NCBI GenBank assembly: GCA_002269645.1
Contig: NIVC01000092.1
Coordinates: 1 to 64,000, forward strand
DNA length: 64,000 nt
Direction of reading: 5' to 3'
Source: Macrostomum lignano
Taxonomy: Eukaryota
Shown: piece by piece, positions 26,670 through 52,279 of the stretch
Position numbering within the stretch: the stretch's first letter is position 1
How the letters are laid out: every line of letters starts with the position of its first letter
Position numbers and translations under genes: made by a program
The notes under the pieces: generated by a model
Seen by the model: only the letters and a program-made list of their open reading frames with translations
What the model was told of the DNA's origin: nothing
The model's database searches: none

Positions 26670-27056
26670 TCGTCGGATTCGCGTCACACTGGCATCAGCT
26701 GCGACGGCTGCGGCCAGCGCGCCTTCACCGGGCGACGCTACAAATGCCTTCGCTGTCACGATTTCGACTTGTGCGGCCCCTGCTTTGACACCGCTAATTT
26801 TGGCGCCTCGGAATTTCGGCGAGCGGCGCGCGGCATTCCAGGCGGAGAGCACGAGCCCTCGCATCCGATGCAGTGCGTCCTGAGTCCTCAGATGCTGCGA
26901 ATCTACTACTGCGAGGATTTCAGCGATCCCAGCGGCGGTGGCATTGTTCCCGGGGGTACTGGCGCCATGTCTTTCACCTGTCCATTGTGCGGCCGGCTGG
27001 GTCTGTCCGAGAATGGCCTGGCGGATCACGTTGTGTCCGAGCATGCGGACGATTCC
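26670..27056 (+). CDS. KCMF1: KCMF1 E3 ubiquitin ligase, ZZ-finger/C2H2 exon (start-codon exon not identified)
   Basis: CTGCAG acceptor, then [39 protein letters not shown]...HPMQCVL...[29 protein letters not shown], then a GTGAGT donor (phase 0). Closely matches the KCMF1 N-terminus. Confidence 0.92.
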
Positions 27057-27104
27057 GTGAGTTTTCTGAACTGCATTCTGCTCGAGTTTTTTATTGCGGG
27101 TCAA

Positions 27105-27500
27105 AGATTTGGGATTAGGGATCTAAGATTGGGATTGGGGATCTAAGATTGGGATTAGGGATCTAAGATTGGGATTAGGGATCTAAGATAGGGATTAGGG
27201 ATCCAAGATTGGGATTAGGGATCTAAGATAGGGATTAGGGATCCAAGATTGGGGTTAGGGATCTAAGATTGGGGTTAGGGATCTAAGATTGGGATTAGGG
27301 ATCTAAGATTGGGATTAGGGATCTAATATTTGGATTTTATGGATCCAAGATCGGGATTTTATGGATTTAAGATTGGGATTTTATGGATCTAAGATTGGGG
27401 TTAGGGATCTAAGATTGGTATTATGGATCTTAGATTCGGATTCGGGATCTTAGATTAGGATTAGGGATCTAAGATTGGGATTAGGGATCTAAAATTAGGA
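27105..27500. repeat. Intronic 20-bp G-rich minisatellite containing TTAGGG (partly duplicated at 33329-33620)
   Basis: Unit GGGATTAGGGATCTAAGATT. Confidence 0.95.
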
Positions 27501-27667
27501 CTTCGTGCCCCAACGTCCCCCCCACCCGCCAGGCCGGTCCGGACGTTGTCTGCCCCTTGACTTACTTGACTTAGCTGCAGGGTGGTCCGTAGACACAGCG
27601 GGGAGGCGAGGGTCGCCCATTCCGCTAGCCCCTGAAGGCCCGCAGACAGGCAGAGGCGTGGGGCCGG

Positions 27668-30600
27668 TCAGGGTGGTCGGATCCGTCCTGCAGCGTGATC
27701 TTCCGTGGTGAAGAAACTGGCTCGTCTAGTCGCCCGAAGGAACTGGATGAGCCGTGGGATGCTGTCGGGCTGGCAGACCTCGTCAATGGACGGGTTCGGC
27801 CCGAGGTAGCGTAGCCGGTCTCTGTTAAAGAAGGGGCAGTGACAGACAAAGTGCTGAGCATCTTCATTGTCGCACTCGCAAAAGGGGCAAATTTCGCTCT
27901 CGAGGTCGCCTCGGAGGAAGCAGTGCCTGACGAGGTAGCCATGGCCGGTAAGGGTCATGACAAAGGCTCGAATATCCTTCCGATTCTGGTTCAGAAGGAT
28001 GTTTCTGAGCCTGCGAGACGGGCAAGGAACCGCGGCACGAGATTGCCGGCAGTTTTGGGTGCCCGCCCATCTGTCCCTGTGGAGGGAGTCAGCCCAGTCG
28101 TCGATCTGACGATTGATGACTGTCAAGGGCATAGGGACCAGGGGGGCAGGGCCGAAGAAAGAGCCAGAGCCGCCCCTCTTGGCGAGGGTGTCTGCCAGCT
28201 CGTTCCCCGGAAACTCTGCGTGTCCTGGGATCCACTTCAGCCTGACAGTATTGCTTCTGGTCAGGAGGTTGAGCTGCCGGGCGCAGTCGGCAACTGTCCG
28301 GGAGTTCGTTGTGGTGTGGCAAAGGGCCTGTAAGGCCGCTTGGCTGTCGGAGTGGATGACAATAGTCTTTCCTCTCGTAACCTTGGCGTTCAGCTCTGCA
28401 GCGCAAGAGCTGATGGCAAGGACTTCGTTCTGGAAGACTGTGGAGAGTCTACCAGTGTGCTGGGCATGCGTGGCAATTACGCGGCCGTTAATGATGATGC
28501 AGACCCCAAAGCCGGCGCGACCGTCTTTGATGGATCCGTCCGTGTAGCAATGGACCTCCTGGAAATTCAAGTGGTCATTGGCAGCATCCCTAGAGGGGAT
28601 GGTGACCTTGTAGCGCTGAAAGAGGTTGAGAGTGCGGGGTTCGCCGTCAGATAGGACGTGGATCCCGCCGCTGTCTCTCAAGTCCTTGAGGCAGAGGTCA
28701 GCGTGGGGCAGAAGCTTGCGCTTAGCCATGGCCCTATGGGGCTGGATTCGAATGCCAGCGTCAGCTAGACGGCGGGCAGTCTTAGCCGCTTCCCTGCGGA
28801 CAAAGATGTCCAGCGGAGGAATGTTGAGGAAGGCGTTGAGGCCATCGTAAGGAGCAGACGGAGGGGCGCTCATGATCGTGCGACATGCGCGCCCTTGCGC
28901 TCTCCTGAGAGCCTCTAGACAGGTCTTTATCTGCAGGGCGCTAGCCCAGATCAGGCCGGCTTACGAGATAGCGGGCCTAACCATTGCAGTGTAGATCCAC
29001 CAGAGGCGCTTGGGGGTGAGCCCCCAGGTGGTGCCGACAGCCCTGCGCAATTGCGTGAGGACTGCGAAGGCCTTTTTGGCTTTTGTTTGAACGTGGGGTG
29101 ACCAGTTCAGCCTGTGGTCCAGGGTAATACCCAGACATTTAGTCTGCTTGCAGAAGGGGATTTCCCTTCCGTAAAGCGTGAGCGGCCGAATCTGCCACTT
29201 GGTCCTGCTGGTGAACATGATCGCTGCGGTCTTAGTCTCAGAGAGCCTTAAACCACAGCGGTCCGCCCATTGCTCAGCGGCGTAGATAAAGTTCTGAAGA
29301 AGGTCCCTGAGGGTATCAGGGGACGGACCAGATGCCACCGCGGTGACATCGTCCGCATAACCAACTTTCAGAATGGGGTCAGGCCGAACATCCCGGAGGA
29401 GCTCATCGATGACCATATTCCAGAGAACTGGAGACAGCACCCCACCTTGCGGGCTACCTTTGCAGACGGGGACCGTCCTCTGGTAGCCCAGCAGACTGGC
29501 GGTGGCCGTGCGATGGCTGATCATGTACATGATCCATCTGGTGAGATGTGGGTGCGTTTGCCTCTCACAAAGAGCTCTTCGGAACGCCTCAAAGAGGACG
29601 TTATCGAAGGCGCCAATGATGTCCAGGAAGATCCCCAGAGCAAAGCCATTACCAAGCACGGCCTTCTCGAGTTTATCGACCAGGACGTGTAGCGCGCTTT
29701 CAGTGGAGCGACCCGCCCGAAAAGCGTGCTGGTTCTCGCTGAGAGGTTTGTTCTTCAGCTCAACAGAGAGAAGGCGCCAAAGCACCAGTCTCTCCATCAG
29801 CTTGACCAGGGAGGAGGTCAAGCTGATCGGTCTAAAGGATTTGATAGAATGGTAGTCCGGGCGGCCTGGCTTAGGGATAAAGATCACCTTTGCCTCAATG
29901 CCTCGGTCCATGCCTGTGGGACATAACCAAGCGTGATGCATGCCCGAAGAAGGCTGCAAAGTTTGCGCAGGAAGCCTGGGCATTTAACCGCCTCTCTTAG
30001 GAGGGCCGGTACAATGCCGTCGGGTCCTGGGGCTTTGAAAGGCTTGAAGGAATTTGCCGCTCTCACGATGCGGTCCTCCGTGATGATAGAGGCAGCCAGC
30101 GCGTGACCTCCCTCCGAGTGATCCGGAGTGGTCTGGTTAGCTGGCTCGTTTGGGAAAAACGCAGTGAGCATTACATCAAGCGTTTCCCCTGGGTTGTCCG
30201 TGGACGTACCGTCGGTGCGTTTGACCGAGGAGAGCTTAGACATTTTGTCCAGCGTGAGCGCTTTCACAACTCTGGAGGTGGGGCGTGAGCCCTCTAGCTC
30301 CTCACAGTATTGTCGCCATTTTTGAGCCTTTGCATTCCTAACCTGCCTTTTAAACTCATGGATTGCTTCATGATAGGCGGTTTGGTCTGCAGGGCTCTTA
30401 GTTTTAGTTGCTCTGCGGTGGAGTCTCTTAGCCCTGCGACGGAGGTTGCCGAGCTCGGGATTCCACCACGGCGCCGATTTTTTCCCTTTATAGGCTTTTA
30501 AAGGGCAGGACGCCTCAAAGGCGGCGGTTAGCGTCTCTGTCAAAACAGTCGCGCACTCATCCGCCTCTCGGCACGACGTGATCGTGGATGGTTGGCCAGG

Positions 30601-31382
30601 AGACCGATGGAATTCCTTCAGGGCGAGCCCGAAGGTTTCCCAATCAGTATTTCTGGCGTTCCGTCTCCACGTAACACGAGTTGCGCTACGCGCGGCCATT
30701 AGGTTGAAGGAGATGAACTTGTGATCCGAGAGTGAGGACACTGGAAGCACCCGCCACGCCCCAATACTCTGGTAGAGTCTGGGCGTTGCGAGCGTAGCGT
30801 CGATCACCTCCGACCACCGTCCGTTGTCAAAGGTAGGGGTGGACCCAGAGTTGCAGAACTCGAGGGTCGTAGAGGCAACGTAGGCTAGGAGGTCTTCGCC
30901 TCTCTGATTAATGCCAGTGCTGCCCCAGTGAGTGTGGTGGGCGTTGATGTCGCCGGCAACCATGAGCTCGTAGTTTTTGGCAGAGCAGAGCTCTACCAGC
31001 GTAGCGAGGGCTCTGGGGACGACCGCAGCATCGCCTGGTAGGTAAACCGAGGCAATGAGGGTGGTCTTCCCAGGAAGAAGGTCCTCGGATTGGATGACGC
31101 AGATGTCCCTGTTGGACAGGTCCGATCTGAGCCACGCACTGAGCGTTTTGCTCGCAAAGATGCAAGCTCTGGGAGGCTGGTTGGCCTCGCGAGGGTAAGT
31201 ATAAAAACAATTGTAGCCAGCAGGGGCGTTTTGAGGCTTACCCTGAGAGTCCAGGGTTCCTGGACGAGGATGAGCCCCGGCTTGTCGAGCTCGGCGTAAC
31301 GCATAAGGTTGACCGAGGCTGCGACGCAGTGCTGCAGATTAATCTGCAGGCAATGGATTCCCTGGTTGCTGATCATTATCAC
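27668..31382 (-). pseudogene. LINE ORF2 (AP endonuclease, reverse transcriptase, RNase H, CCHC finger), disrupted
   Basis: Motifs LQINLQH..LVQEPW, AGDINAHH..WGS, TPTF, SDHKFI, APGPDG, FRPISL, KGSPQGGVLSPVLW, YADD, YTDGS...QNEVLAI..SDSQAAL..WIPGH..GNELAD, LTGH..CPFC..EDAQHFVCHC. Frameshifts at ~31245 and ~29900 and an in-frame TAA at 28961-28963. Confidence 0.93.
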
Positions 31383-32842
31383 GCAGTTGGGGAATCGTTG
31401 AGCAGGTCATCCTCCTTTTCAGTGGTGGGTGACCCGCAGACCTCCATGGGAGTTTCAGCGTCCTCAGCAGTTAGGGTGGCTGTGGAGTCCTCCGCGGACG
31501 TGAGCCCAGCGTGGACGTTACCGTCGCCTCCCCTGCGTGCTTCGGTGCTGTCACTGCCCGTCCCCTCTGCCTCGTCGGTCAGGTCGATGCGGGTGGCGCC
31601 AGCCTCCTGGTGAGTCACAGACTCGAACCAGTCGGTCGGAGCCTCCCCGCTTAGAGTCTGGCCTTCTGGCTGTTGGGGTGGAGCGCGAGAAGCGCGGGCC
31701 CGCTCACGATGCGCACGAAGGTTCTTGGCCTGGTCCAGCGCGCGCTGGATCAGGCCGGACCTCCGGGTGCTCCTGGCGGGTCTGCGATTGCGACTTCCGG
31801 TTTCAGCAGCGCGAACTGCCTTACCGGGCATAGGATCGGCCGTTTGCCTCGGCTTCTTTGCCGGAGGAGCCTGGGCCCCAGTTCCGGTTTCGGAAGCCTT
31901 GGCATTCTTGGCTTCATCAGCTTTCCGCTCCTCGCAACGGAGGATGGTCAGCTGAGTCAGACCAATATGAATTGTGGACTTAGGCGGCAAGCGTTTAGCC
32001 CAGTCATCAGAGAGCCCTAGGATCACCGTAGCCCCCTTCTCCTTGCGAGAAGTGGCGTGGTGTAGGAGCCCGTTGACCTCAAGGTCGGGGTGCAGCTTTA
32101 GCAATATTTGCCTAAGCTGATCTCCGGACTTAATGGCACTGCCGGCCGGGATCCAGACGCGAAAGCGCTGGGTCTTCTGTCGTTCGCCCTCGCTGGCGAA
32201 GACGAGCTTGCCGAGCTTCTTGGGCCAGTTCAGCTTTGGCAGAAGCTCGCGTAGATTGCGGCTGCTCTCCTCCGAGCTGCACCAGATGAAGATGCAGCCG
32301 TCGGTCTTGGCAGACTTGACCACGCTCACAGGGCGGCCCGCCAGGAGCTGGTCGATGAGCGCAGCATCGATGGTGCGCCAGGCACTGTCGAGCTCGTCGG
32401 CCGTGAGGTCCTGCTCTTCCCCGAAGACGATGACCGCCGGTTGGAGCTTGACCTTTGAGGCGTAGTTGGTGGCGGCGGTTCCCGAAGGCCCGGCCGCGCT
32501 TGTAGCAGGTATACTGGGTGGCTCACCAGCGGGGGTTGTATCCTGGGGGGCAGGGGTTGCTGTGGTTCCTTTCGGCCCAACAGCAGCCTCGCCCTCCCTA
32601 GGTTCCCCCTCCGCCGGTGGCCGGCCCGCAGTACCCCGTAGTCGCCGTCGCCGCTCGTTGCGGCGTTGGTTGCGGGTGCGTCGGGCTTCAGCGGAGGGCC
32701 CGGTTGCGCGTGCGGGCATGTCACCGGCCGAGCCGGCGGCAAGCCCATCTGCCCCCGGTGCGGCGGCGCTGGTGCCAGAGTCACCGGCCGGAGTTGCCGG
32801 GGCCCCGGCTTCAGCGGGGTTGAAAGAGGCGGATGACGCCAT
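31379..32842 (-). CDS. LINE ORF1 (gag-like, probable DUF4780-like core, no CCHC knuckle seen)
   Basis: Open ~487 aa from ATG 32842, immediately upstream of ORF2, with a basic RRNQRRNERRRR stretch. The central GCIFIWC...FRVWIP...GATVILGL segment resembles R1/LOA ORF1 cores. Confidence 0.8.
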   Translation of the reverse strand: MASSASFNPAEAGAPATPAGDSGTSAAAPGADGLAAGSAGDMPARATGPSAEARRTRNQRRNERRRRLRGTAGRPPAEGEPREGEAAVGPKGTTATPAPQDTTPAGEPPSIPATSAAGPSGTAATNYASKVKLQPAVIVFGEEQDLTADELDSAWRTIDAALIDQLLAGRPVSVVKSAKTDGCIFIWCSSEESSRNLRELLPKLNWPKKLGKLVFASEGERQKTQRFRVWIPAGSAIKSGDQLRQILLKLHPDLEVNGLLHHATSRKEKGATVILGLSDDWAKRLPPKSTIHIGLTQLTILRCEERKADEAKNAKASETGTGAQAPPAKKPRQTADPMPGKAVRAAETGSRNRRPARSTRRSGLIQRALDQAKNLRAHRERARASRAPPQQPEGQTLSGEAPTDWFESVTHQEAGATRIDLTDEAEGTGSDSTEARRGGDGNVHAGLTSAEDSTATLTAEDAETPMEVCGSPTTEKEDDLLNDSPTA

Positions 32843-33062
32843 AACTGAAAGCGGGAAGGAGTGAGCTGAGTCACAAAAGAAAGAGGAAAGAAGAAAAAGA
32901 AAAGGACCGCTAGCGACCGGACAACCCCCGGCCTTCCAGCCCATCGGCACGGTCAAACACCTTAGGCATTAGGGGGTACGTTAAGCAGTACCACGGCCTG
33001 CAGGCTGGCAAGCCAGACCCGCATACCCAAGTTCGGCCGAAGCCACTGGATGGGTCGCCAGC

Positions 33063-33311
33063 GTCGGAGCCCAGTCTGTCCAGCAGCCCTAGGGTCTGCC
33101 TTGAACACACGCGGGGACGAGTACCCTGGGTCGACTTGTGAAACAGCGTGGGGGGGGGTCTGCGGCTGCCAGCGGCAAATAGCGGGTGCAGACCTCCCTC
33201 TCCAGCCTTGACCTGCTGAAGATAGGGGCAGGCGTGAAGCATCGCAGACCGTAGCCCATAGGCCTGGTCTGTCTCATACTTCACTGGCGTGCTGAATACA
33301 CCTTCGCGTGC
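33063..33311 (-). ncRNA. Predicted HDV-like self-cleaving ribozyme at the LINE 5' terminus
   Basis: P1 GCACGCG (33311-33305) pairs with CGCGUGU (33113-33107), opening with a G1-U wobble. P3 GGG/CCC encloses L3 UACUCGU. P1.1 is A-U plus C-G. A P4 hairpin is followed by J4/2 CAGA (C at 33078). P2 is gucg..ccca(g)/(c)uggg..cgac. J1/2 is ~170 nt. Confidence 0.75.
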
Positions 33312-33652
33312 CGTTGTCTGCCCAGTCTAGGGATTAGGGATCCAAGATTGGGGTTAGGGATCTAAGATTGGGGTTAGGGATCTAAGATTGGGATTAGGGA
33401 TCTAAGATTGGGATTAGGGATCTAAGATTGGGATTAGGGATCTAATATTTGGATTTTATGGATCCAAGATCGGGATTTTATGGATTTAAGATTGGGATTT
33501 TATGGATCTAAGATTGGGGTTAGGGATCTAAGATTGGTATTATGGATCTTAGATTCGGATTCGGGATCTTAGATTAGGATTAGGGATCTAAGATTGGGAT
33601 TAGGGATCTAAAATTAGGACTTCGTGCCCCAACGTCCCCCCCCACCCGCCAG

Positions 33653-34189
33653 GCCGGTCCGGACGTTGTCTGCCCAGTCTGCGCCTGCGTGCCCAGCAGC
33701 GGCCCCTGCCCGCGCATGCGCAGCCTTGTGCGCCACCTGCTGCGCGACCACGCCGCCGACGCCGCCGCAACAGCCGCAGCGGCAGCCGCTTCAGGCGGCG
33801 CCTCCTCCGCTGCCGCCGCCGCCGCAGCCGCCGCGGCGAACCGACGGCGCCACCCCGCCGGCGACCCGATCACGGAGCTGCTGGCTCAGCTGGGCGGCAG
33901 GGCGCCGTCCAATTTGGAGTTGCAGCTGCGCAGGTCGCGCCTTCTCGAACGGCATCCGGTGATATCCGGCAGTTCCACGGCGACGGCTACGGCGACGGCT
34001 ACGTCTACAGCGGCTGCGGGTGCTGCTGCATCGGCGCCGGCTGCAGAGACAGCGCAGGCCGTGGCTAGTAAAAAACAGCAGCAGCAGCAGCAGTCACATA
34101 GCCAGCGGTATCCGCTGCTGCACTCTCTGGCTACTGCTGATGCATCGGCCGCAGCCAACTCCGACGCTGCTGCTGCCCTTGATGCCCAG
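33653..34189 (+). CDS. KCMF1: KCMF1 exon (second zinc-finger region, Ala-rich linker)
   Basis: CCGCCAG acceptor, then AGPDVVCPVCACVP...RHLLRDH...DPITELLAQLGG (cf. KCMF1 VICPIC, DPIAELLSQLSG), then a CAG|GTAATT donor. Phase 0, in frame with the previous exon. Confidence 0.88.
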
Positions 34190-34249
34190 GTAATTGGCGG
34201 TTTTCGCTTTTGGAATTCAGAATTTCGGGTTTCCAGATGCGGTGTATTG

Positions 34250-34600
34250 GTATTCTGAAATGGGGTATTGGCTATTGGGATTCTGAAGTGGTATTAAGAA
34301 TGAGATTCAGAAGTGGAGTATTAGGATTCTGAAGTGGGGTATTGGGATTCTGAAATGGGGTATTGGGATTCTGAAATGGGGTATTGGGATTCTGAAGTGG
34401 GGTATTGGGATTCTGAAATGGGGTATTGGGATTCTGAAATGGGGTATTGGGATTCTGAAGTGGGGTATTGGGATTCTGAAATGGGGTATTGGGATTCTGA
34501 AATGGGGTATTGAGATTCAGAAGTGAGGTATTGGGATTCTAAAGTGGGGTATTGGGAATCTGAAGGGGGTATTGGGATTCAGAAGCGTGGTATTGGGATT
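34250..34600. repeat. Intronic 21-bp G-rich minisatellite
   Basis: Unit GGGGTATTGGGATTCTGAAAT. Confidence 0.93.
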
Positions 34601-34806: not shown

Positions 34807-35029
34807 CTGATGCAGTTTTGGCACGCCTGATTTTACCTGGAACTGTCGTCAGCTTATAGAGATTGTAATTTAATTTGAAGTTGGATAGTTTCAAAATATT
34901 TTGTTTTTGTTAGGTGAGACTGTTTCCTGACTAAAATGCTGTTCATTCTCTTAGCTGGTCATGCTCTCGTATCAGTATGACCTCATCCTGTCCTGTAGTA
35001 CAATCCTTATCATCAATCATTTTTCAGTA

Positions 35030-35560
35030 TTATGACCCTCTCAATCTGCTCATTGTTCAGTAGCAGCATGACCCTCTCAATCTGCTCATTGTTCAGTAGC
35101 AGCATGACCCTCTCAATCTGCTCATTGTTCAGTAGCAGCATGACCCTCTCAATCTGCTCATTGTTCAGTAGCAGCATGACCCTCTCAATCTGCTCATTGT
35201 TCAGTAGCAGCATGACCCTCTCAATCTGCTCATTGTTCAGTAGCAGCATGACCCTCTCAATCTGCTCATTGTTCAGTAGCAGCATGACCCTCTCAATCTG
35301 CTCATTGTTCAGTAGCAGTATAACCCTCTCAATCTGCTCATTGTTCAGTAGCAGCATGACCCTCTCAATCTGCTCATTGTTCAGTAGCAGCATGACCCTC
35401 TTAATCTGCTCATTGTTCAGTAGCAGCATGACCCCCTCAATCTGCTCATTGTGACATGGGCATGACCCCTAATCTGCTCATTCTGACATGAGCGTGACCC
35501 CTAATCTGCTCATTCTGACATGAGCGTGACCCCTAATCTGCTCATTCTGACATGAGCATG
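35030..35560. repeat. 36-bp minisatellite with a shorter degenerate tail
   Basis: Unit ATGACCCTCTCAATCTGCTCATTGTTCAGTAGCAGC. Confidence 0.95.
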
Positions 35561-36039: not shown

Positions 36040-36815
36040 TAGATCCTTATTTTAAGTAATAATCACCCATATATCTAGATCCTTCATTTTTGAGAAGTCA
36101 CCCTTATATCTAGTTCCTCATTTTGAGTAGGCACCCTTATATCTAGATCCTCATTTTGAGTAGGCACCCTTATATCTAGATCCTCATTTTGAGTAGGCAC
36201 CCTTATATCTAGTTCCTCATTTTGAGTAGGCACCCTTATATCTAGTTCCTCATTTTGAGTAGGCACCCTTATATCTAGTTCCTCATTTTGAGTAGGCACC
36301 CTTATATCTAGTTCCTCATTTTGAGTAGGCACCCTTATATCTAGATCCTCATTTTGAGTAGGCACCCTTATATCTAGATCCTCATTTTGAGTAGGCACCC
36401 TTATATCTAGTTCCTCATTTTGAGTAGGCACCCTTATATCTAGATCCTCATTTTGAGTAGGCACCCTTATATCTAGATCCTCATTTTGAGTAGGCACTCA
36501 TATATCTAGATCCTTATTTTGAGTAGGCACCCTTATATCTAGTTCCTCATTTTGAGTAGGCACCCTTATATCTAGATCCTCATTTTGAGTAGGCACTCAT
36601 ATATCTAGATCCTTATTTTGAGTAGGCACCCTTATATCTAGTTCCTCATTTTGAGTAGGCACCCTTATATCTAGATCCTCATTTTGAGCATATCTAGATC
36701 CTCATTTTGAGTAGGCACTCATATATCTAGATCCTCATTTTGAGCATATCTAGATCCTCATTTTGAGTAGGTACCCTTAAATCTAGATCCTCATTTTGAG
36801 TAGGCACCCTTATAT
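36040..36815. repeat. 33-bp minisatellite
   Basis: Unit TATATCTAGATCCTCATTTTGAGTAGGCACCCT. Confidence 0.95.
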
Positions 36816-51593: not shown

Positions 51594-51850
51594 GCTCTCG
51601 AAGGCGTATTCAGCATGCCAGTGAATTATGAGACAGACTAGGCCTACGGGCTACGGTCTGTGATGCTTCACATCTGCCCCTCTTTCTTCAGCAGGTAAAG
51701 ATTGGCGGGAGATCTGCACCATCTATTTGCTTCTGGCAACCGCAGACTCCTCCACGCTGTCCCGCAAGTCGGCCCAGGGGTACTCGTCCCCGCGAGTGTT
51801 TAAGGCAGACCCTAGGGCTGAAGGACAGACACTGCTCCCCAATGCTGGTA
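51594..51850 (+). mobile_element. Solo 5'-end (ribozyme) fragment of the same LINE family, degenerate
   Basis: Aligns colinearly with the reverse complement of 33311-33063 (GAAGG.GTATTCAGCA.GCCAGTGAA...GGGTACTCGTCCCCGCG.GTGTT.AAGGCAGACCCTAGGGCTG). No ORF or tail follows. Confidence 0.88.
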
Positions 51851-52279
51851 CCAGTCAAAAACTCAGTCATCGCCTTGTCTAGGCGATTTAAGTAATTTGA
51901 ACAACTATGCAATTTAAGTAAAACTTTTGGCAATAAGAATATTTTTCAAAATCAACTAGAGAGTCAGGCAATGTAATATTTTTATGATTTCAACACAGCT
52001 TAGTAAGATTTTATGAACTTTCGCTTTTTACAGGCTTGGATCTCAATCGATAAAAGCTACGAGTATCTGCATTCCATTGCACAGCTTATTAATTTATTTA
52101 GTGATCGTAATCTGACAATAAACGATGCAACTCATTTGAGGTTTAAATTTTGTTTTATTACAGTAAAAATAAATTATTAGCAGGATAAGTATAGCAGCAT
52201 AAAAATTTCGGACAAATATAGTCTGAAAAGCAGAAAGCTGTACTTTAAAAAACTGCCCGTTGTTTAGCAATCAGTGTCG

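What the first reader, a model, noticed from the sequence alone, without database searches (positions are those of the whole stretch)
33063..33312. HDV-like self-cleaving ribozyme defining the 5' end of an R1/LOA-like LINE, with a non-canonical A-U P1.1 pair and a ~170-nt J1/2 insert
Seen (minus strand, folded by hand): P1 G1CACGCG pairs with CGCGUGU and opens with the hallmark G-U wobble. P3 GGG/CCC encloses L3 UACUCGU (HDV UCCUCGC, CPEB3 UUCACGU). The two nucleotides after P1' are G,U, which pair exactly with L3 C and A, so the usual C-G in P1.1 is replaced by A-U on both sides. A P4 hairpin follows, then J4/2 CAGA (C-N-R-A, putative catalytic C at 33078), then a P2 3' strand. G1 (33311) lies one base from the TSD (33313), so the element boundary matches the predicted cleavage site. 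Established: HDV-like ribozymes process the 5' ends of several non-LTR clades (R2, RTE, LOA/R1-type, L1Tc/ingi). Inference: this family cuts itself out of host transcripts. This copy has one G fewer at the P2/P3 junction than the copy at 51.77 kb, so it may be mutated or mis-sequenced.
Basis: partly seen in the sequence, partly recalled or inferred. Interest (0 to 1): 0.9.

Follow-up and report, generated by a model that had tools for sequence, protein, structure and literature searches.

The report
Self-cutting RNA heading a jumping gene
The first ~250 bases of a dead arthropod-type LINE retrotransposon can fold into the hepatitis-delta-like self-cleaving RNA shape, with the predicted cut exactly at the element's first base; this is a plausible new example of a trick already known from other LINE families, and it is still untested at the bench.

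Summary
G1 (33311) directly abuts a 12-bp target-site duplication, so the predicted cut coincides with the LINE's 5' end.

The motif alone is not rare. A relaxed descriptor gives about 6 chance hits per 64 kb. With P1 fixed to element nucleotides 1-7, only 12 of 5000 shuffled UTRs give a full motif.

A decayed copy at 51.6 kb and one metagenomic relative (L001) share the core. They show three compensatory changes, which is not significant with three sequences.

The 169-nt J1/2 folds into a closed domain.

Against the ribozyme reading:
- No Rfam HDV-like model matches.
- This copy lacks one G at the P2/P3 junction, and its ORF2 is broken.
- L001 has a non-CNRA J4/2, and a C where G1's U partner should be.
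- No further copies could be found.

Long J1/2 inserts (216-498 nt in silkmoth R2) and variable P1.1 pairs are already documented.

Verdict: probably (about 0.7) a genuine HDV-like 5'-processing ribozyme of an R1/LOA-type LINE. It is a new member of a known kind, of modest interest, and catalysis is untested.

The parts
33305..33311 (-). P1 5' strand GCACGCG. G33311 is the predicted +1 nucleotide, with cleavage 5' of it.
   Evidence: 7/7 pairing with 33107-33113. In copy 2, A3:U is replaced by U3:A.
33136..33304 (-). J1/2 peripheral domain, 169 nt, predicted to be a closed multi-helix domain that brings P1 and P2 together.
   Evidence: MFE -70.1 kcal/mol, z = -3.06. The closing helix GUG/CAC becomes GCG/CGC in copy 2.
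33127..33135 (-). P2 5' strand GUCG-A-CCCA. One G is missing at the P2/P3 junction relative to copy 2.
   Evidence: L001 has GCCG-A-CCCAAA with matching 3' changes.
33114..33126 (-). P3 (GGG/CCC) enclosing L3 UACUCGU.
   Evidence: P3 is invariant in 3 sequences. L3 differs only at position 2 (A/A/U).
33107..33113 (-). P1 3' strand CGCGUGU.
33105..33106 (-). P1.1 3' dinucleotide GU, pairing with C33121 and A33122 of L3.
33079..33104 (-). P4 hairpin: U-A and C-G at the base, then an internal loop, then GGCAG(A)CC/GGCUGCU.
   Evidence: -8.9 kcal/mol. L001 has a perfect 8-bp P4.
33074..33078 (-). J4/2, CAGA(C). C33078 is the putative catalytic cytosine.
   Evidence: The C is invariant in all 3 sequences.
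33063..33073 (-). P2 3' strand (C)UGGG-CUC-CGAC.
27556..33311 (-). Defective R1/LOA-type LINE, 5756 nt. ORF1 lies at 31379-32956. ORF2 is in four pieces: the APE endonuclease at 30993-31382 and 29884-30963, the reverse transcriptase at 28961-29983, and RNase H plus a Cys/His motif at 27668-28873. ORF2 carries two frameshifts and one in-frame stop. The 3' end is ...CTGCAGCTAAGTCAAGTAAGTCAAG.
33312..33323 (-). Upstream copy of the 12-bp target-site duplication GGGCAGACAACG.
27544..27555 (-). Downstream copy of the 12-bp target-site duplication GGGCAGACAACG.
51594..51838 (+). Second, decayed copy holding only the ribozyme region (84% identity). Homology begins at G1. P2/P3 reads CCCAGGGG. There is a U.C mismatch in P1, and the P2 3' strand is degenerate.

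Best explanation
The first ~250 nt of this LINE family encode an HDV-like (delta-type) self-cleaving ribozyme.

Proposed mechanism (inferred, none of it shown here):
1. The element is transcribed as part of a longer read-through or host transcript.
2. The 5' UTR folds into the nested double pseudoknot. P1 stacks on P1.1 and P4. P2 stacks on P3. A 169-nt structured J1/2 domain clamps P1 and P2 together.
3. The J4/2 cytosine (33078), together with a divalent ion, cleaves the bond 5' of G33311.
4. This releases LINE RNA that starts precisely at element nucleotide 1 with a 5'-OH. Every new full-length copy therefore begins at G1, whatever the flank.
5. By analogy with R2 and L1Tc, the folded ribozyme may also help uncapped RNA initiate ORF1 translation about 470 nt downstream.

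This particular copy is a relic. It has lost one G at the P2/P3 junction and its ORF2 is broken, so it is probably weakly active or inactive.

Shown here: the fold is present, it sits at the boundary, and the core is conserved.
For: - All helices are present.
- P1 uses exactly element nucleotides 1-7.
- The 5' end is fixed independently in three ways. First, a 12-bp TSD abuts G1. Second, a close relative's 3' end (L009) shows the LINE ends at ...GTAAGTCAAG, so the flanking repeat is target, not element. Third, homology with copy 2 starts at G1.
- Anchored shuffle test: 12 of 5000 shuffles give a full motif.
- The block GGGU.CUCGUCCCCGCG.G.GUU.AAGGCAGACC is about 88% identical between the window copy and L001. 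ORF1 DNA is 75% identical, and the rest of the UTR is full of indels.
- Invariant in all three sequences: the first U, the C's and the G of L3, P3, the GU of P1.1 and the J4/2 C. The L3 G/U and the catalytic C are the positions reported as rigidly conserved in R2 and HDV-like ribozymes (PMC3774820).
- Compensatory changes: P1 A:U to U:A; the J1/2 closing helix U:A to C:G; P2 outer U:A to C:G; and P2 inner G:C to A:U by eye.
- J1/2 folds as a closed domain, z = -3.06. This matches the known activating 'pinch' role of large J1/2 domains (PMC4908430).
- Precedent exists for 5'-junction cleavage in R4/Dong, RTE, baggins and L1Tc (PMC3774820, PMC6765202).
Against: - No Rfam HDV-like family matches at E <= 10, even with the stretch cut so that P2 is the first base.
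- Only three sequences exist, and only two of them include the P1 5' strand.
- Covariation measures do not exceed the shuffles (160/500).
- Copy 1 needs either a 4-bp inner P2 with a 5-nt J4/2, or a 2-bp P3.
- L001 has J4/2 GAACGUG (no CNRA), a U.U in P1.1, and C rather than U opposite G1.
- Unanchored, the relaxed motif is common by chance.
- The whole-region MFE z-score is only -1.1.
- Other UTR blocks are about as conserved as the core.
- More distant R1-like loci show no homologous element.
- There is no experimental or transcript-end data.
Confidence: 0.7

Rival explanations
1. The conserved 5' UTR is a structured but non-catalytic RNA. It could be a binding site for the element's own proteins, an IRES-like translation element, or DNA-level internal promoter sequence. 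In that case the HDV-like drawing is a partial coincidence, and the precise 5' end comes from transcription initiation.
For: - Several other UTR blocks are as conserved as the core.
- There is no Rfam hit.
- L001 departs from the canonical J4/2 and from the G.U wobble.
- Covariation is not significant.
Against: - P1 pairs exactly nucleotides 1-7 with the 7 nt directly after P3 (anchored test 12/5000).
- The L3 and J4/2 invariant positions coincide with the catalytic-core positions of HDV-like ribozymes (PMC3774820).
- The first bases, GCACGCG, do not look like an arthropod initiator. That judgement rests on my own knowledge of the TCAGT-type initiator.
- In R2 and L1Tc these other roles coexist with catalysis rather than replacing it (PMC6765202).
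Confidence: 0.2
2. Chance resemblance. A GC-rich 5' UTR happens to contain helices that can be arranged into an HDV-like diagram.
For: - The relaxed descriptor yields about 6 hits per shuffled 64-kb window, and a hit in 60 of 100 shuffles of the 6.7-kb element.
- 20% of shuffled UTRs contain some 7/7 partner for nucleotides 1-7.
Against: - The full anchored motif appears in only 0.24% of shuffles.
- The same core is retained in a decayed second copy and in a relative with 58-72% ORF1 identity, with compensatory changes in P1, P2 and the J1/2 closing helix.
Confidence: 0.07

Closest known systems
R2 retrotransposon HDV-like ribozymes (Drosophila, silkmoths and other animals)
   Same: - Sits at the 5' end of a non-LTR element.
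- Has the double-pseudoknot order.
- Has a 3-bp P3, a conserved L3/P1.1 block, a catalytic C in J4/2 and a variable P4.
- Has very long J1/2 loops (216-498 nt in silkmoths).
- In Drosophila, cleavage is at the precise 5' junction (PMC3774820).
   Different: - R2 is a single-ORF, restriction-like-endonuclease element that is specific to 28S rDNA and co-transcribed with rRNA.
- Here the host is a two-ORF element with APE, reverse transcriptase and RNase H, and shows no site specificity. The L009 and window flanks differ.
- No sequence-level homology to R2 was tested.
baggins (LOA clade), RTE and R4/Dong HDV-like ribozymes
   Same: These are APE-type or related LINEs without obvious promoters. 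They carry a 5'-terminal HDV-like ribozyme that cuts at element nucleotide 1 (PMC3774820, PMC6765202).
   Different: Whether this element belongs to LOA or R1 was not resolved. Its endonuclease's best solved relative is the TRAS1 endonuclease, which is R1 clade.
L1Tc/ingi ribozyme (L1TcRz, Pr77)
   Same: A 5'-terminal HDV-like ribozyme in an APE/RT/RNase H LINE. Its P1.1 differs in number and type of pairs from the HDV canon yet is still active (PMC3185411, PMC4035085).
   Different: L1TcRz is minimal (77 nt), doubles as an internal promoter, and occurs in trypanosomatids. Here the ribozyme is about 250 nt with a large J1/2 domain.
Large HDV-like ribozymes with structured J1/2 peripheral domains
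   Same: A structured J1/2 insert brings P1 and P2 together. That 'pinch' accelerates catalysis by up to about 1000-fold (PMC4908430). The insert here is predicted to be closed by covarying helices.
   Different: The activating role here is only predicted from folding.
CPEB3 ribozyme (mammalian intron)
   Same: L001's L3, UUCUCGU with a U.U plus C-G P1.1, resembles that arrangement.
   Different: It is a single-copy intronic ribozyme and is not associated with a retrotransposon. The Rfam CPEB3 model does not match.

Membership tests
HDV-like (delta-type) self-cleaving ribozymes | Nested double-pseudoknot strand order: P1-J1/2-P2-P3-L3-P3'-P1'-P1.1-P4-J4/2-P2'. | tested here: met
   88.7% of cells are paired, against 36-42% for slid controls.
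HDV-like (delta-type) self-cleaving ribozymes | Cleavage-site G at +1 forming the closing G.U of a 6-7 bp P1. | tested here: met
   Copy 1 and copy 2 have G1.U and a 7-bp P1. Copy 2 has one U.C mismatch. In L001 the partner is C and the 5' strand is missing because the contig is cut.
HDV-like (delta-type) self-cleaving ribozymes | 3-bp P3 with a ~7-nt L3 carrying the conserved U...G (reverse wobble) and C. | tested here: met
   GGG/CCC with L3 U(A/U)CUCGU is invariant apart from position 2. The criterion is taken from PMC3774820.
HDV-like (delta-type) self-cleaving ribozymes | P1.1: the two nucleotides after P1' pair with L3 positions 3 and 2. | tested here: met
   G-C and U-A in both window copies. 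L001 has G-C plus U.U. Variable P1.1 is documented in active ribozymes (PMC4035085).
HDV-like (delta-type) self-cleaving ribozymes | Cytosine at the first position of J4/2 (canonically C-N-R-A), followed by the P2 3' strand. | tested here: inconclusive
   The C is present and invariant in 3 of 3 sequences. The window copies read CAGA, but L001 reads C-G-U-G.
HDV-like (delta-type) self-cleaving ribozymes | P2 of at least 5 bp stacking on P3. | tested here: inconclusive
   Copy 1 has 4 + 4 bp because a junction G is missing. The copy 2 5' strand would give 5 bp. L001 has 6 + 4 bp. About one third of R2 ribozymes have P2 mismatches (PMC3774820).
HDV-like (delta-type) self-cleaving ribozymes | Statistically supported covariation of the helices. 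| tested here: inconclusive
   Three double-sided changes among 85 pairs. 160 of 500 shuffles do as well. Only 3 sequences were available.
HDV-like (delta-type) self-cleaving ribozymes | Match to curated covariance models (Rfam HDV, CPEB3, drz families). | tested here: not met
   There were 0 hits at the gathering threshold. There were also none at E <= 10 on 32950-33400, on 33040-33136, or on L001 83-180. These models are narrow sequence families, so the failure is weak evidence.
HDV-like (delta-type) self-cleaving ribozymes | Divalent-ion-dependent self-scission that gives 5'-OH and 2',3'-cyclic phosphate ends and is abolished by C-to-U at J4/2. | not testable with these tools
   This needs in vitro transcription and cleavage assays.
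Retrotransposon 5'-processing ribozymes | Predicted cleavage site coincides with the element's first nucleotide, with variable upstream flanks. | tested here: met
   The TSD abuts G1. The copy 2 flank is unrelated upstream of G1. The element's 3' end is confirmed by L009.
R1/LOA-group (I-superfamily) non-LTR retrotransposons | ORF1 plus an ORF2 with an APE endonuclease, reverse transcriptase and RNase H, a short TSD, and no LTRs. | tested here: met
   Pfam Exo_endo_phos_2, RVT_1 and RNase_H. The nearest named relatives are arthropod R1-type proteins. The endonuclease's best PDB match is the TRAS1 endonuclease, E = 7e-15. The TSD is 12 bp. The exact clade (R1 or LOA) was not resolved by phylogeny.

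The most novel reading that the evidence does not exclude
This may be the first HDV-like 5'-processing ribozyme lineage in R1-type arthropod LINEs, meaning elements with a TRAS1-like endonuclease. R1 proper has been thought to use its own promoter. The family tolerates an A-U or U.U P1.1, possibly a G1-C closing pair, and a non-CNRA J4/2 (in L001). That would widen the sequence rules used in descriptor searches.
Probability: 0.25. Interest if true: 0.45.

Novelty: new member of a known kind. Interest (0 to 1): 0.35.

Why it matters
If confirmed, it adds another APE-type LINE lineage, from soil or other arthropods, to the list of retrotransposons that define their RNA 5' end by HDV-like self-cleavage rather than with a promoter.

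It would also supply a natural example of a large, structured J1/2 domain and of relaxed P1.1 and J4/2 sequence rules. Those are useful for tuning ribozyme search descriptors.

It would not change the current picture of how such elements work.

Tried and rejected
Searches for further family copies, all empty or uninformative:
- An ORF1 protein search found only one cluster, P0001/L001.
- Its other member, P0122/L010, holds only 157 nt of UTR.
- A DNA pattern for the ribozyme core found 0 hits in metagenome, genome and viral contigs.
- An ORF1-profile locus search in metagenome contigs found 0 confirmed hits.
- A six-frame translation of both 5' UTRs, used as a protein query, found 0 hits.
- Reverse-transcriptase relatives (40-53% identity, L002-L008) were fetched and scanned with a covariance model of the core, an L3/P3 regular expression and descriptors. 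Nothing homologous turned up.
- The one strict-descriptor hit (L005 945-1093) lacks the conserved L3 U/G and is not at an element 5' end, so I take it as chance.

Ideas rejected:
- The flanking 20-nt-repeat unit is part of the LINE's 3' UTR. Rejected because relative L009 ends at ...GTAAGTCAAC and continues into unrelated DNA.
- The flank is homologous to the LINE's 5' UTR. Rejected because the only match is the 17-nt B/B' identity.
- Copy 2 is a short internally deleted element. Rejected because no LINE 3' end lies nearby.
- A distal alternative P2' (CGAACU-UGGGU). Considered and rejected because L001 supports the proximal P2', CCCAAA/UUUGGG.

Papers not held: Ruminski 2011, Webb & Luptak 2011 and Eickbush 2010.

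Full report
**What is at the coordinates.**
- P1 is GCACGCG (33311-33305), paired 7/7 with CGUGUGU-type CGCGUGU (33113-33107) and closed by G1.U.
- J1/2 is a 169-nt insert (33304-33136).
- The P2 5' strand is GUCG-A-CCCA (33135-33127).
- P3 is GGG/CCC around L3 UACUCGU (33126-33114).
- The dinucleotide GU (33106-33105) pairs with C33121 and A33122, giving P1.1.
- P4 is a hairpin at 33104-33079.
- C33078 is followed by AGA.
- The P2 3' strand is (C)UGGG-CUC-CGAC (33074-33063).
- An ordinary MFE fold cannot draw the pseudoknot, but it recovers the nested part, P2, P3 and P4.

**The element.**
- Downstream on the same strand lies a two-ORF LINE. ORF1 is at 31379-32956.
- ORF2 has an APE endonuclease, a reverse transcriptase (RT), RNase H and a C-terminal Cys/His motif.
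- ORF2 is split into four pieces by two frameshifts and one in-frame stop (the coordinates give frames 2, 0, 1, 1). This copy is therefore dead.
- Its nearest named relatives are arthropod 'R1-type' proteins, from leafhopper, beetle, ant and springtail.
- The best solved relative of the endonuclease is the TRAS1 endonuclease of the R1 clade.
- I did not resolve R1 versus LOA.

**The boundaries.**
- The 3' end of a close relative (L009, RT/RNase H region 69% identical) reads ...CCCTGCAGCTAAGTCAAAGTAAGTCAGTAAGTCAAC and then continues into unrelated DNA.
- The window copy therefore ends at ...CTGCAGCTAAGTCAAGTAAGTCAAG, position 27556.
- Immediately after that comes GGGCAGACAACG (27555-27544). The same 12-mer lies at 33323-33312, directly abutting G33311.
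- The predicted cleavage site thus coincides with the element/TSD junction. The only ambiguity is whether G33312 belongs to the duplication or to the element.
- A second, independent fragment (51594-51838, + strand, 84% identity) begins its homology at the same G, with an unrelated upstream flank.

**Is it more than chance?**
- On its own, no. With J1/2 allowed up to 250 nt, a relaxed HDV-like descriptor gives about 6 hits per shuffled 64-kb window. It also gives at least one hit in 60 of 100 shuffles of the element.
- Anchored to the independently defined 5' end, yes. Some 7/7 partner for nucleotides 1-7 occurs in 20% of shuffled UTRs. A complete motif occurs in only 12 of 5000. A complete motif means P3, L3 and P3' immediately upstream, a 2-bp P1.1, a P4 hairpin, a C-initiated J4/2 and P2.

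**Relatives.**
- Only one related 5' UTR could be found, on contig L001 from a JGI metagenome. Its ORF1 is 58% identical overall and 72% in the conserved domain.
- The contig starts inside J1/2, so the P1 5' strand is missing.
- The block from P2 to P4 is the longest well-conserved stretch of the UTR, about 88% over the 34-nt core. That compares with 75% DNA identity in the ORF1 domain and indel-rich sequence elsewhere. Three other UTR blocks reach 72-75%.
- Invariant in all three sequences are P3, L3 positions 1 and 3-7, the P1.1 GU, the P4 5' strand and the J4/2 C.
- The L3 U/G pair, an L3 C and the catalytic C are among the few positions reported as rigidly conserved in R2 and other HDV-like ribozymes (PMC3774820; PMC4870747 says there are five conserved nucleotides in total).

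**Compensatory changes.**
- In P1, A3:U (copy 1) becomes U3:A (copy 2).
- In the J1/2 closing helix, U:A becomes C:G (copy 2).
- In outer P2, U:A becomes C:G (L001).
- At the P2/P3 junction, the G:C implied by copy 2 and copy 1 becomes A:U pairs in L001 (CCCAAA/UUUGGG). The tool does not count this one because of alignment gaps.
- On the three-sequence alignment, 88.7% of cells pair, against 36-42% when partners are slid. However, the structure was derived from one of these sequences, and the covariation measures are not above the shuffles (160/500).
- Covariation is therefore suggestive only.

**Departures from the canon.**
- Copy 1 has CCCAGGG where copy 2 has CCCAGGGG. Copy 1 must therefore use either a 4-bp inner P2 with J4/2 CAGAC, or a 2-bp P3.
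- Copy 2 has a U.C mismatch in P1 and a degenerate P2 3' strand.
- L001 has L3 UUCUCGU, so its P1.1 is C-G plus U.U. The A-U pair in the window lineage is therefore a one-sided gain, not a double substitution.
- L001's P1' ends in C, so G1 would form G-C rather than G.U.
- L001's J4/2 is GAACGUG, which keeps the aligned C but not C-N-R-A.
- No Rfam family matches anywhere in the window at gathering thresholds.
- No HDV-like family matches at E <= 10 in small stretches either. This includes stretches cut to begin at P2, so that the long J1/2 could not be blamed.
- Those models are narrow, so this is weak negative evidence, but it is a membership test that was not met.

**J1/2.**
- The 169-nt insert folds on its own into a closed multi-helix domain (-70.1 kcal/mol, z = -3.06).
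- The same closing helices form in copy 2.
- This matches published behaviour. Large J1/2 peripheral domains bring P1 and P2 together and accelerate HDV-like ribozymes by up to about three orders of magnitude (PMC4908430).
- Silkmoth R2 ribozymes carry J1/2 loops of 216-498 nt (PMC3774820).
- The insert is therefore not a novelty.
- Nor is a non-GC P1.1. L1Tc/ingi ribozymes differ from HDV and R2 in the number and identity of P1.1 pairs and are still active (PMC4035085).

**Most likely mechanism.**
- As in R2, R4/Dong, RTE, baggins and L1Tc (PMC3774820, PMC6765202), the family most likely frees its RNA from longer co-transcripts by self-cleavage 5' of G1.
- That fixes the template's 5' end. 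The folded ribozyme may also assist translation of the uncapped RNA.
- The fold, its position and its conservation are shown here. Cleavage, the catalytic role of the C and any translation role are inferred.
- I put this at about 0.7.
- The main rival (about 0.2) is a conserved structured UTR that is not catalytic, with roles in promoter activity, protein binding or translation.
- Pure chance is about 0.07.

**Context noticed on the way.**
- The LINE lies antisense inside a 6.6-kb intron of a KCMF1-like zinc-finger gene on the + strand.
- Exon 1 of that gene ends at 27056 before GTGAGT. It encodes ...[29 protein letters not shown], a partial zf-Di19 hit.
- The next exon starts at about 33653, after CAG, and encodes AGPDVVCPVCA...
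- The 12-bp 'target' CGTTGTCTGCCC is itself exon-2 coding sequence.
- The LINE sits in the upstream member of a 98% identical ~350-bp tandem duplication of the intron-end/exon-2-start (27211-27555 plus 33324-33328, versus 33329-33680). The downstream member provides the intact exon.
- I could not decide whether the duplication preceded the insertion or arose with it.

**Verdict.**
- It is a further member of a well-known class, in a defective copy, supported by few sequences and no biochemistry.
- Interest is about 0.35.

Noticed in passing
window 27211-27555 and 33330-33675 (plus 33312-33328): A ~350-bp tandem duplication, 98% identical, flanks the LINE. Each unit holds the 3' part of an intron (20-nt repeats, a polypyrimidine tract and CAG) and the first ~28 nt of the next exon. 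The LINE, with its 12-bp TSD, interrupts the upstream unit, and the downstream unit keeps the exon intact. It is unclear whether the duplication existed beforehand or arose during integration.
   Followed up: partly
window + strand, ~26770-27056 and ~33653-34258: These are exons of a KCMF1-like zinc-finger gene. One encodes HPMQC...[25 protein letters not shown] and gives a partial Pfam zf-Di19 hit. The next encodes AGPDVVCPVCA...GDPITELLAQLGG. The LINE is antisense within the intervening intron (27057-33652). The gene name rests on my own recollection of KCMF1.
   Followed up: partly
window 27105-27500 and 33329-33610: A 20-nt tandem repeat (TCCCTAATCCCAATCTTAGA)n with variants fills the host intron on both sides of the LINE.
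   Followed up: no
window 33320-33328 vs 33069-33077 (minus strand): The flank immediately upstream of G1 contains AGACUGGGC. This is identical to the ribozyme's J4/2-P2' segment (C)AGACUGGGC. In a read-through transcript of this particular insertion it could compete for the P2 5' strand. Because the flank is host exon sequence, this is probably coincidence.
   Followed up: partly
window 9733-12000: A long microsatellite-like array with 8- and 12-nt spacing and strong GC and AT skew.
   Followed up: no
window 35013-35454 and 36084-36497: Two minisatellites read as repeated peptides: a 36-nt unit (LLLNNEQIERVM) and a 33-nt unit (VPTQNEDLDIR). They are probably non-coding tandem repeats.
   Followed up: no
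window 51839-51870: Copy 2 of the LINE family retains only the ribozyme region. Homology fades about 25 nt past the P2 3' strand, and AT-rich unrelated DNA follows. A 5'-end-only LINE fragment is unusual, and no LINE 3' end lies nearby.
   Followed up: partly
L005 945-1093 (+): This was the only hit of my strict HDV-like descriptor in the fetched loci. It lies upstream of an R1-like RT, but it lacks the conserved L3 U/G and is not at a plausible element 5' end. It is probably chance.
   Followed up: partly
L003 2286-3773 next to 3863-9948: In an ENA contig, a full-length-looking R1-like LINE lies directly downstream of an LTR-retrotransposon integrase ORF (rve/DUF5641). No HDV-like core was detected at its 5' side.
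   Followed up: partly
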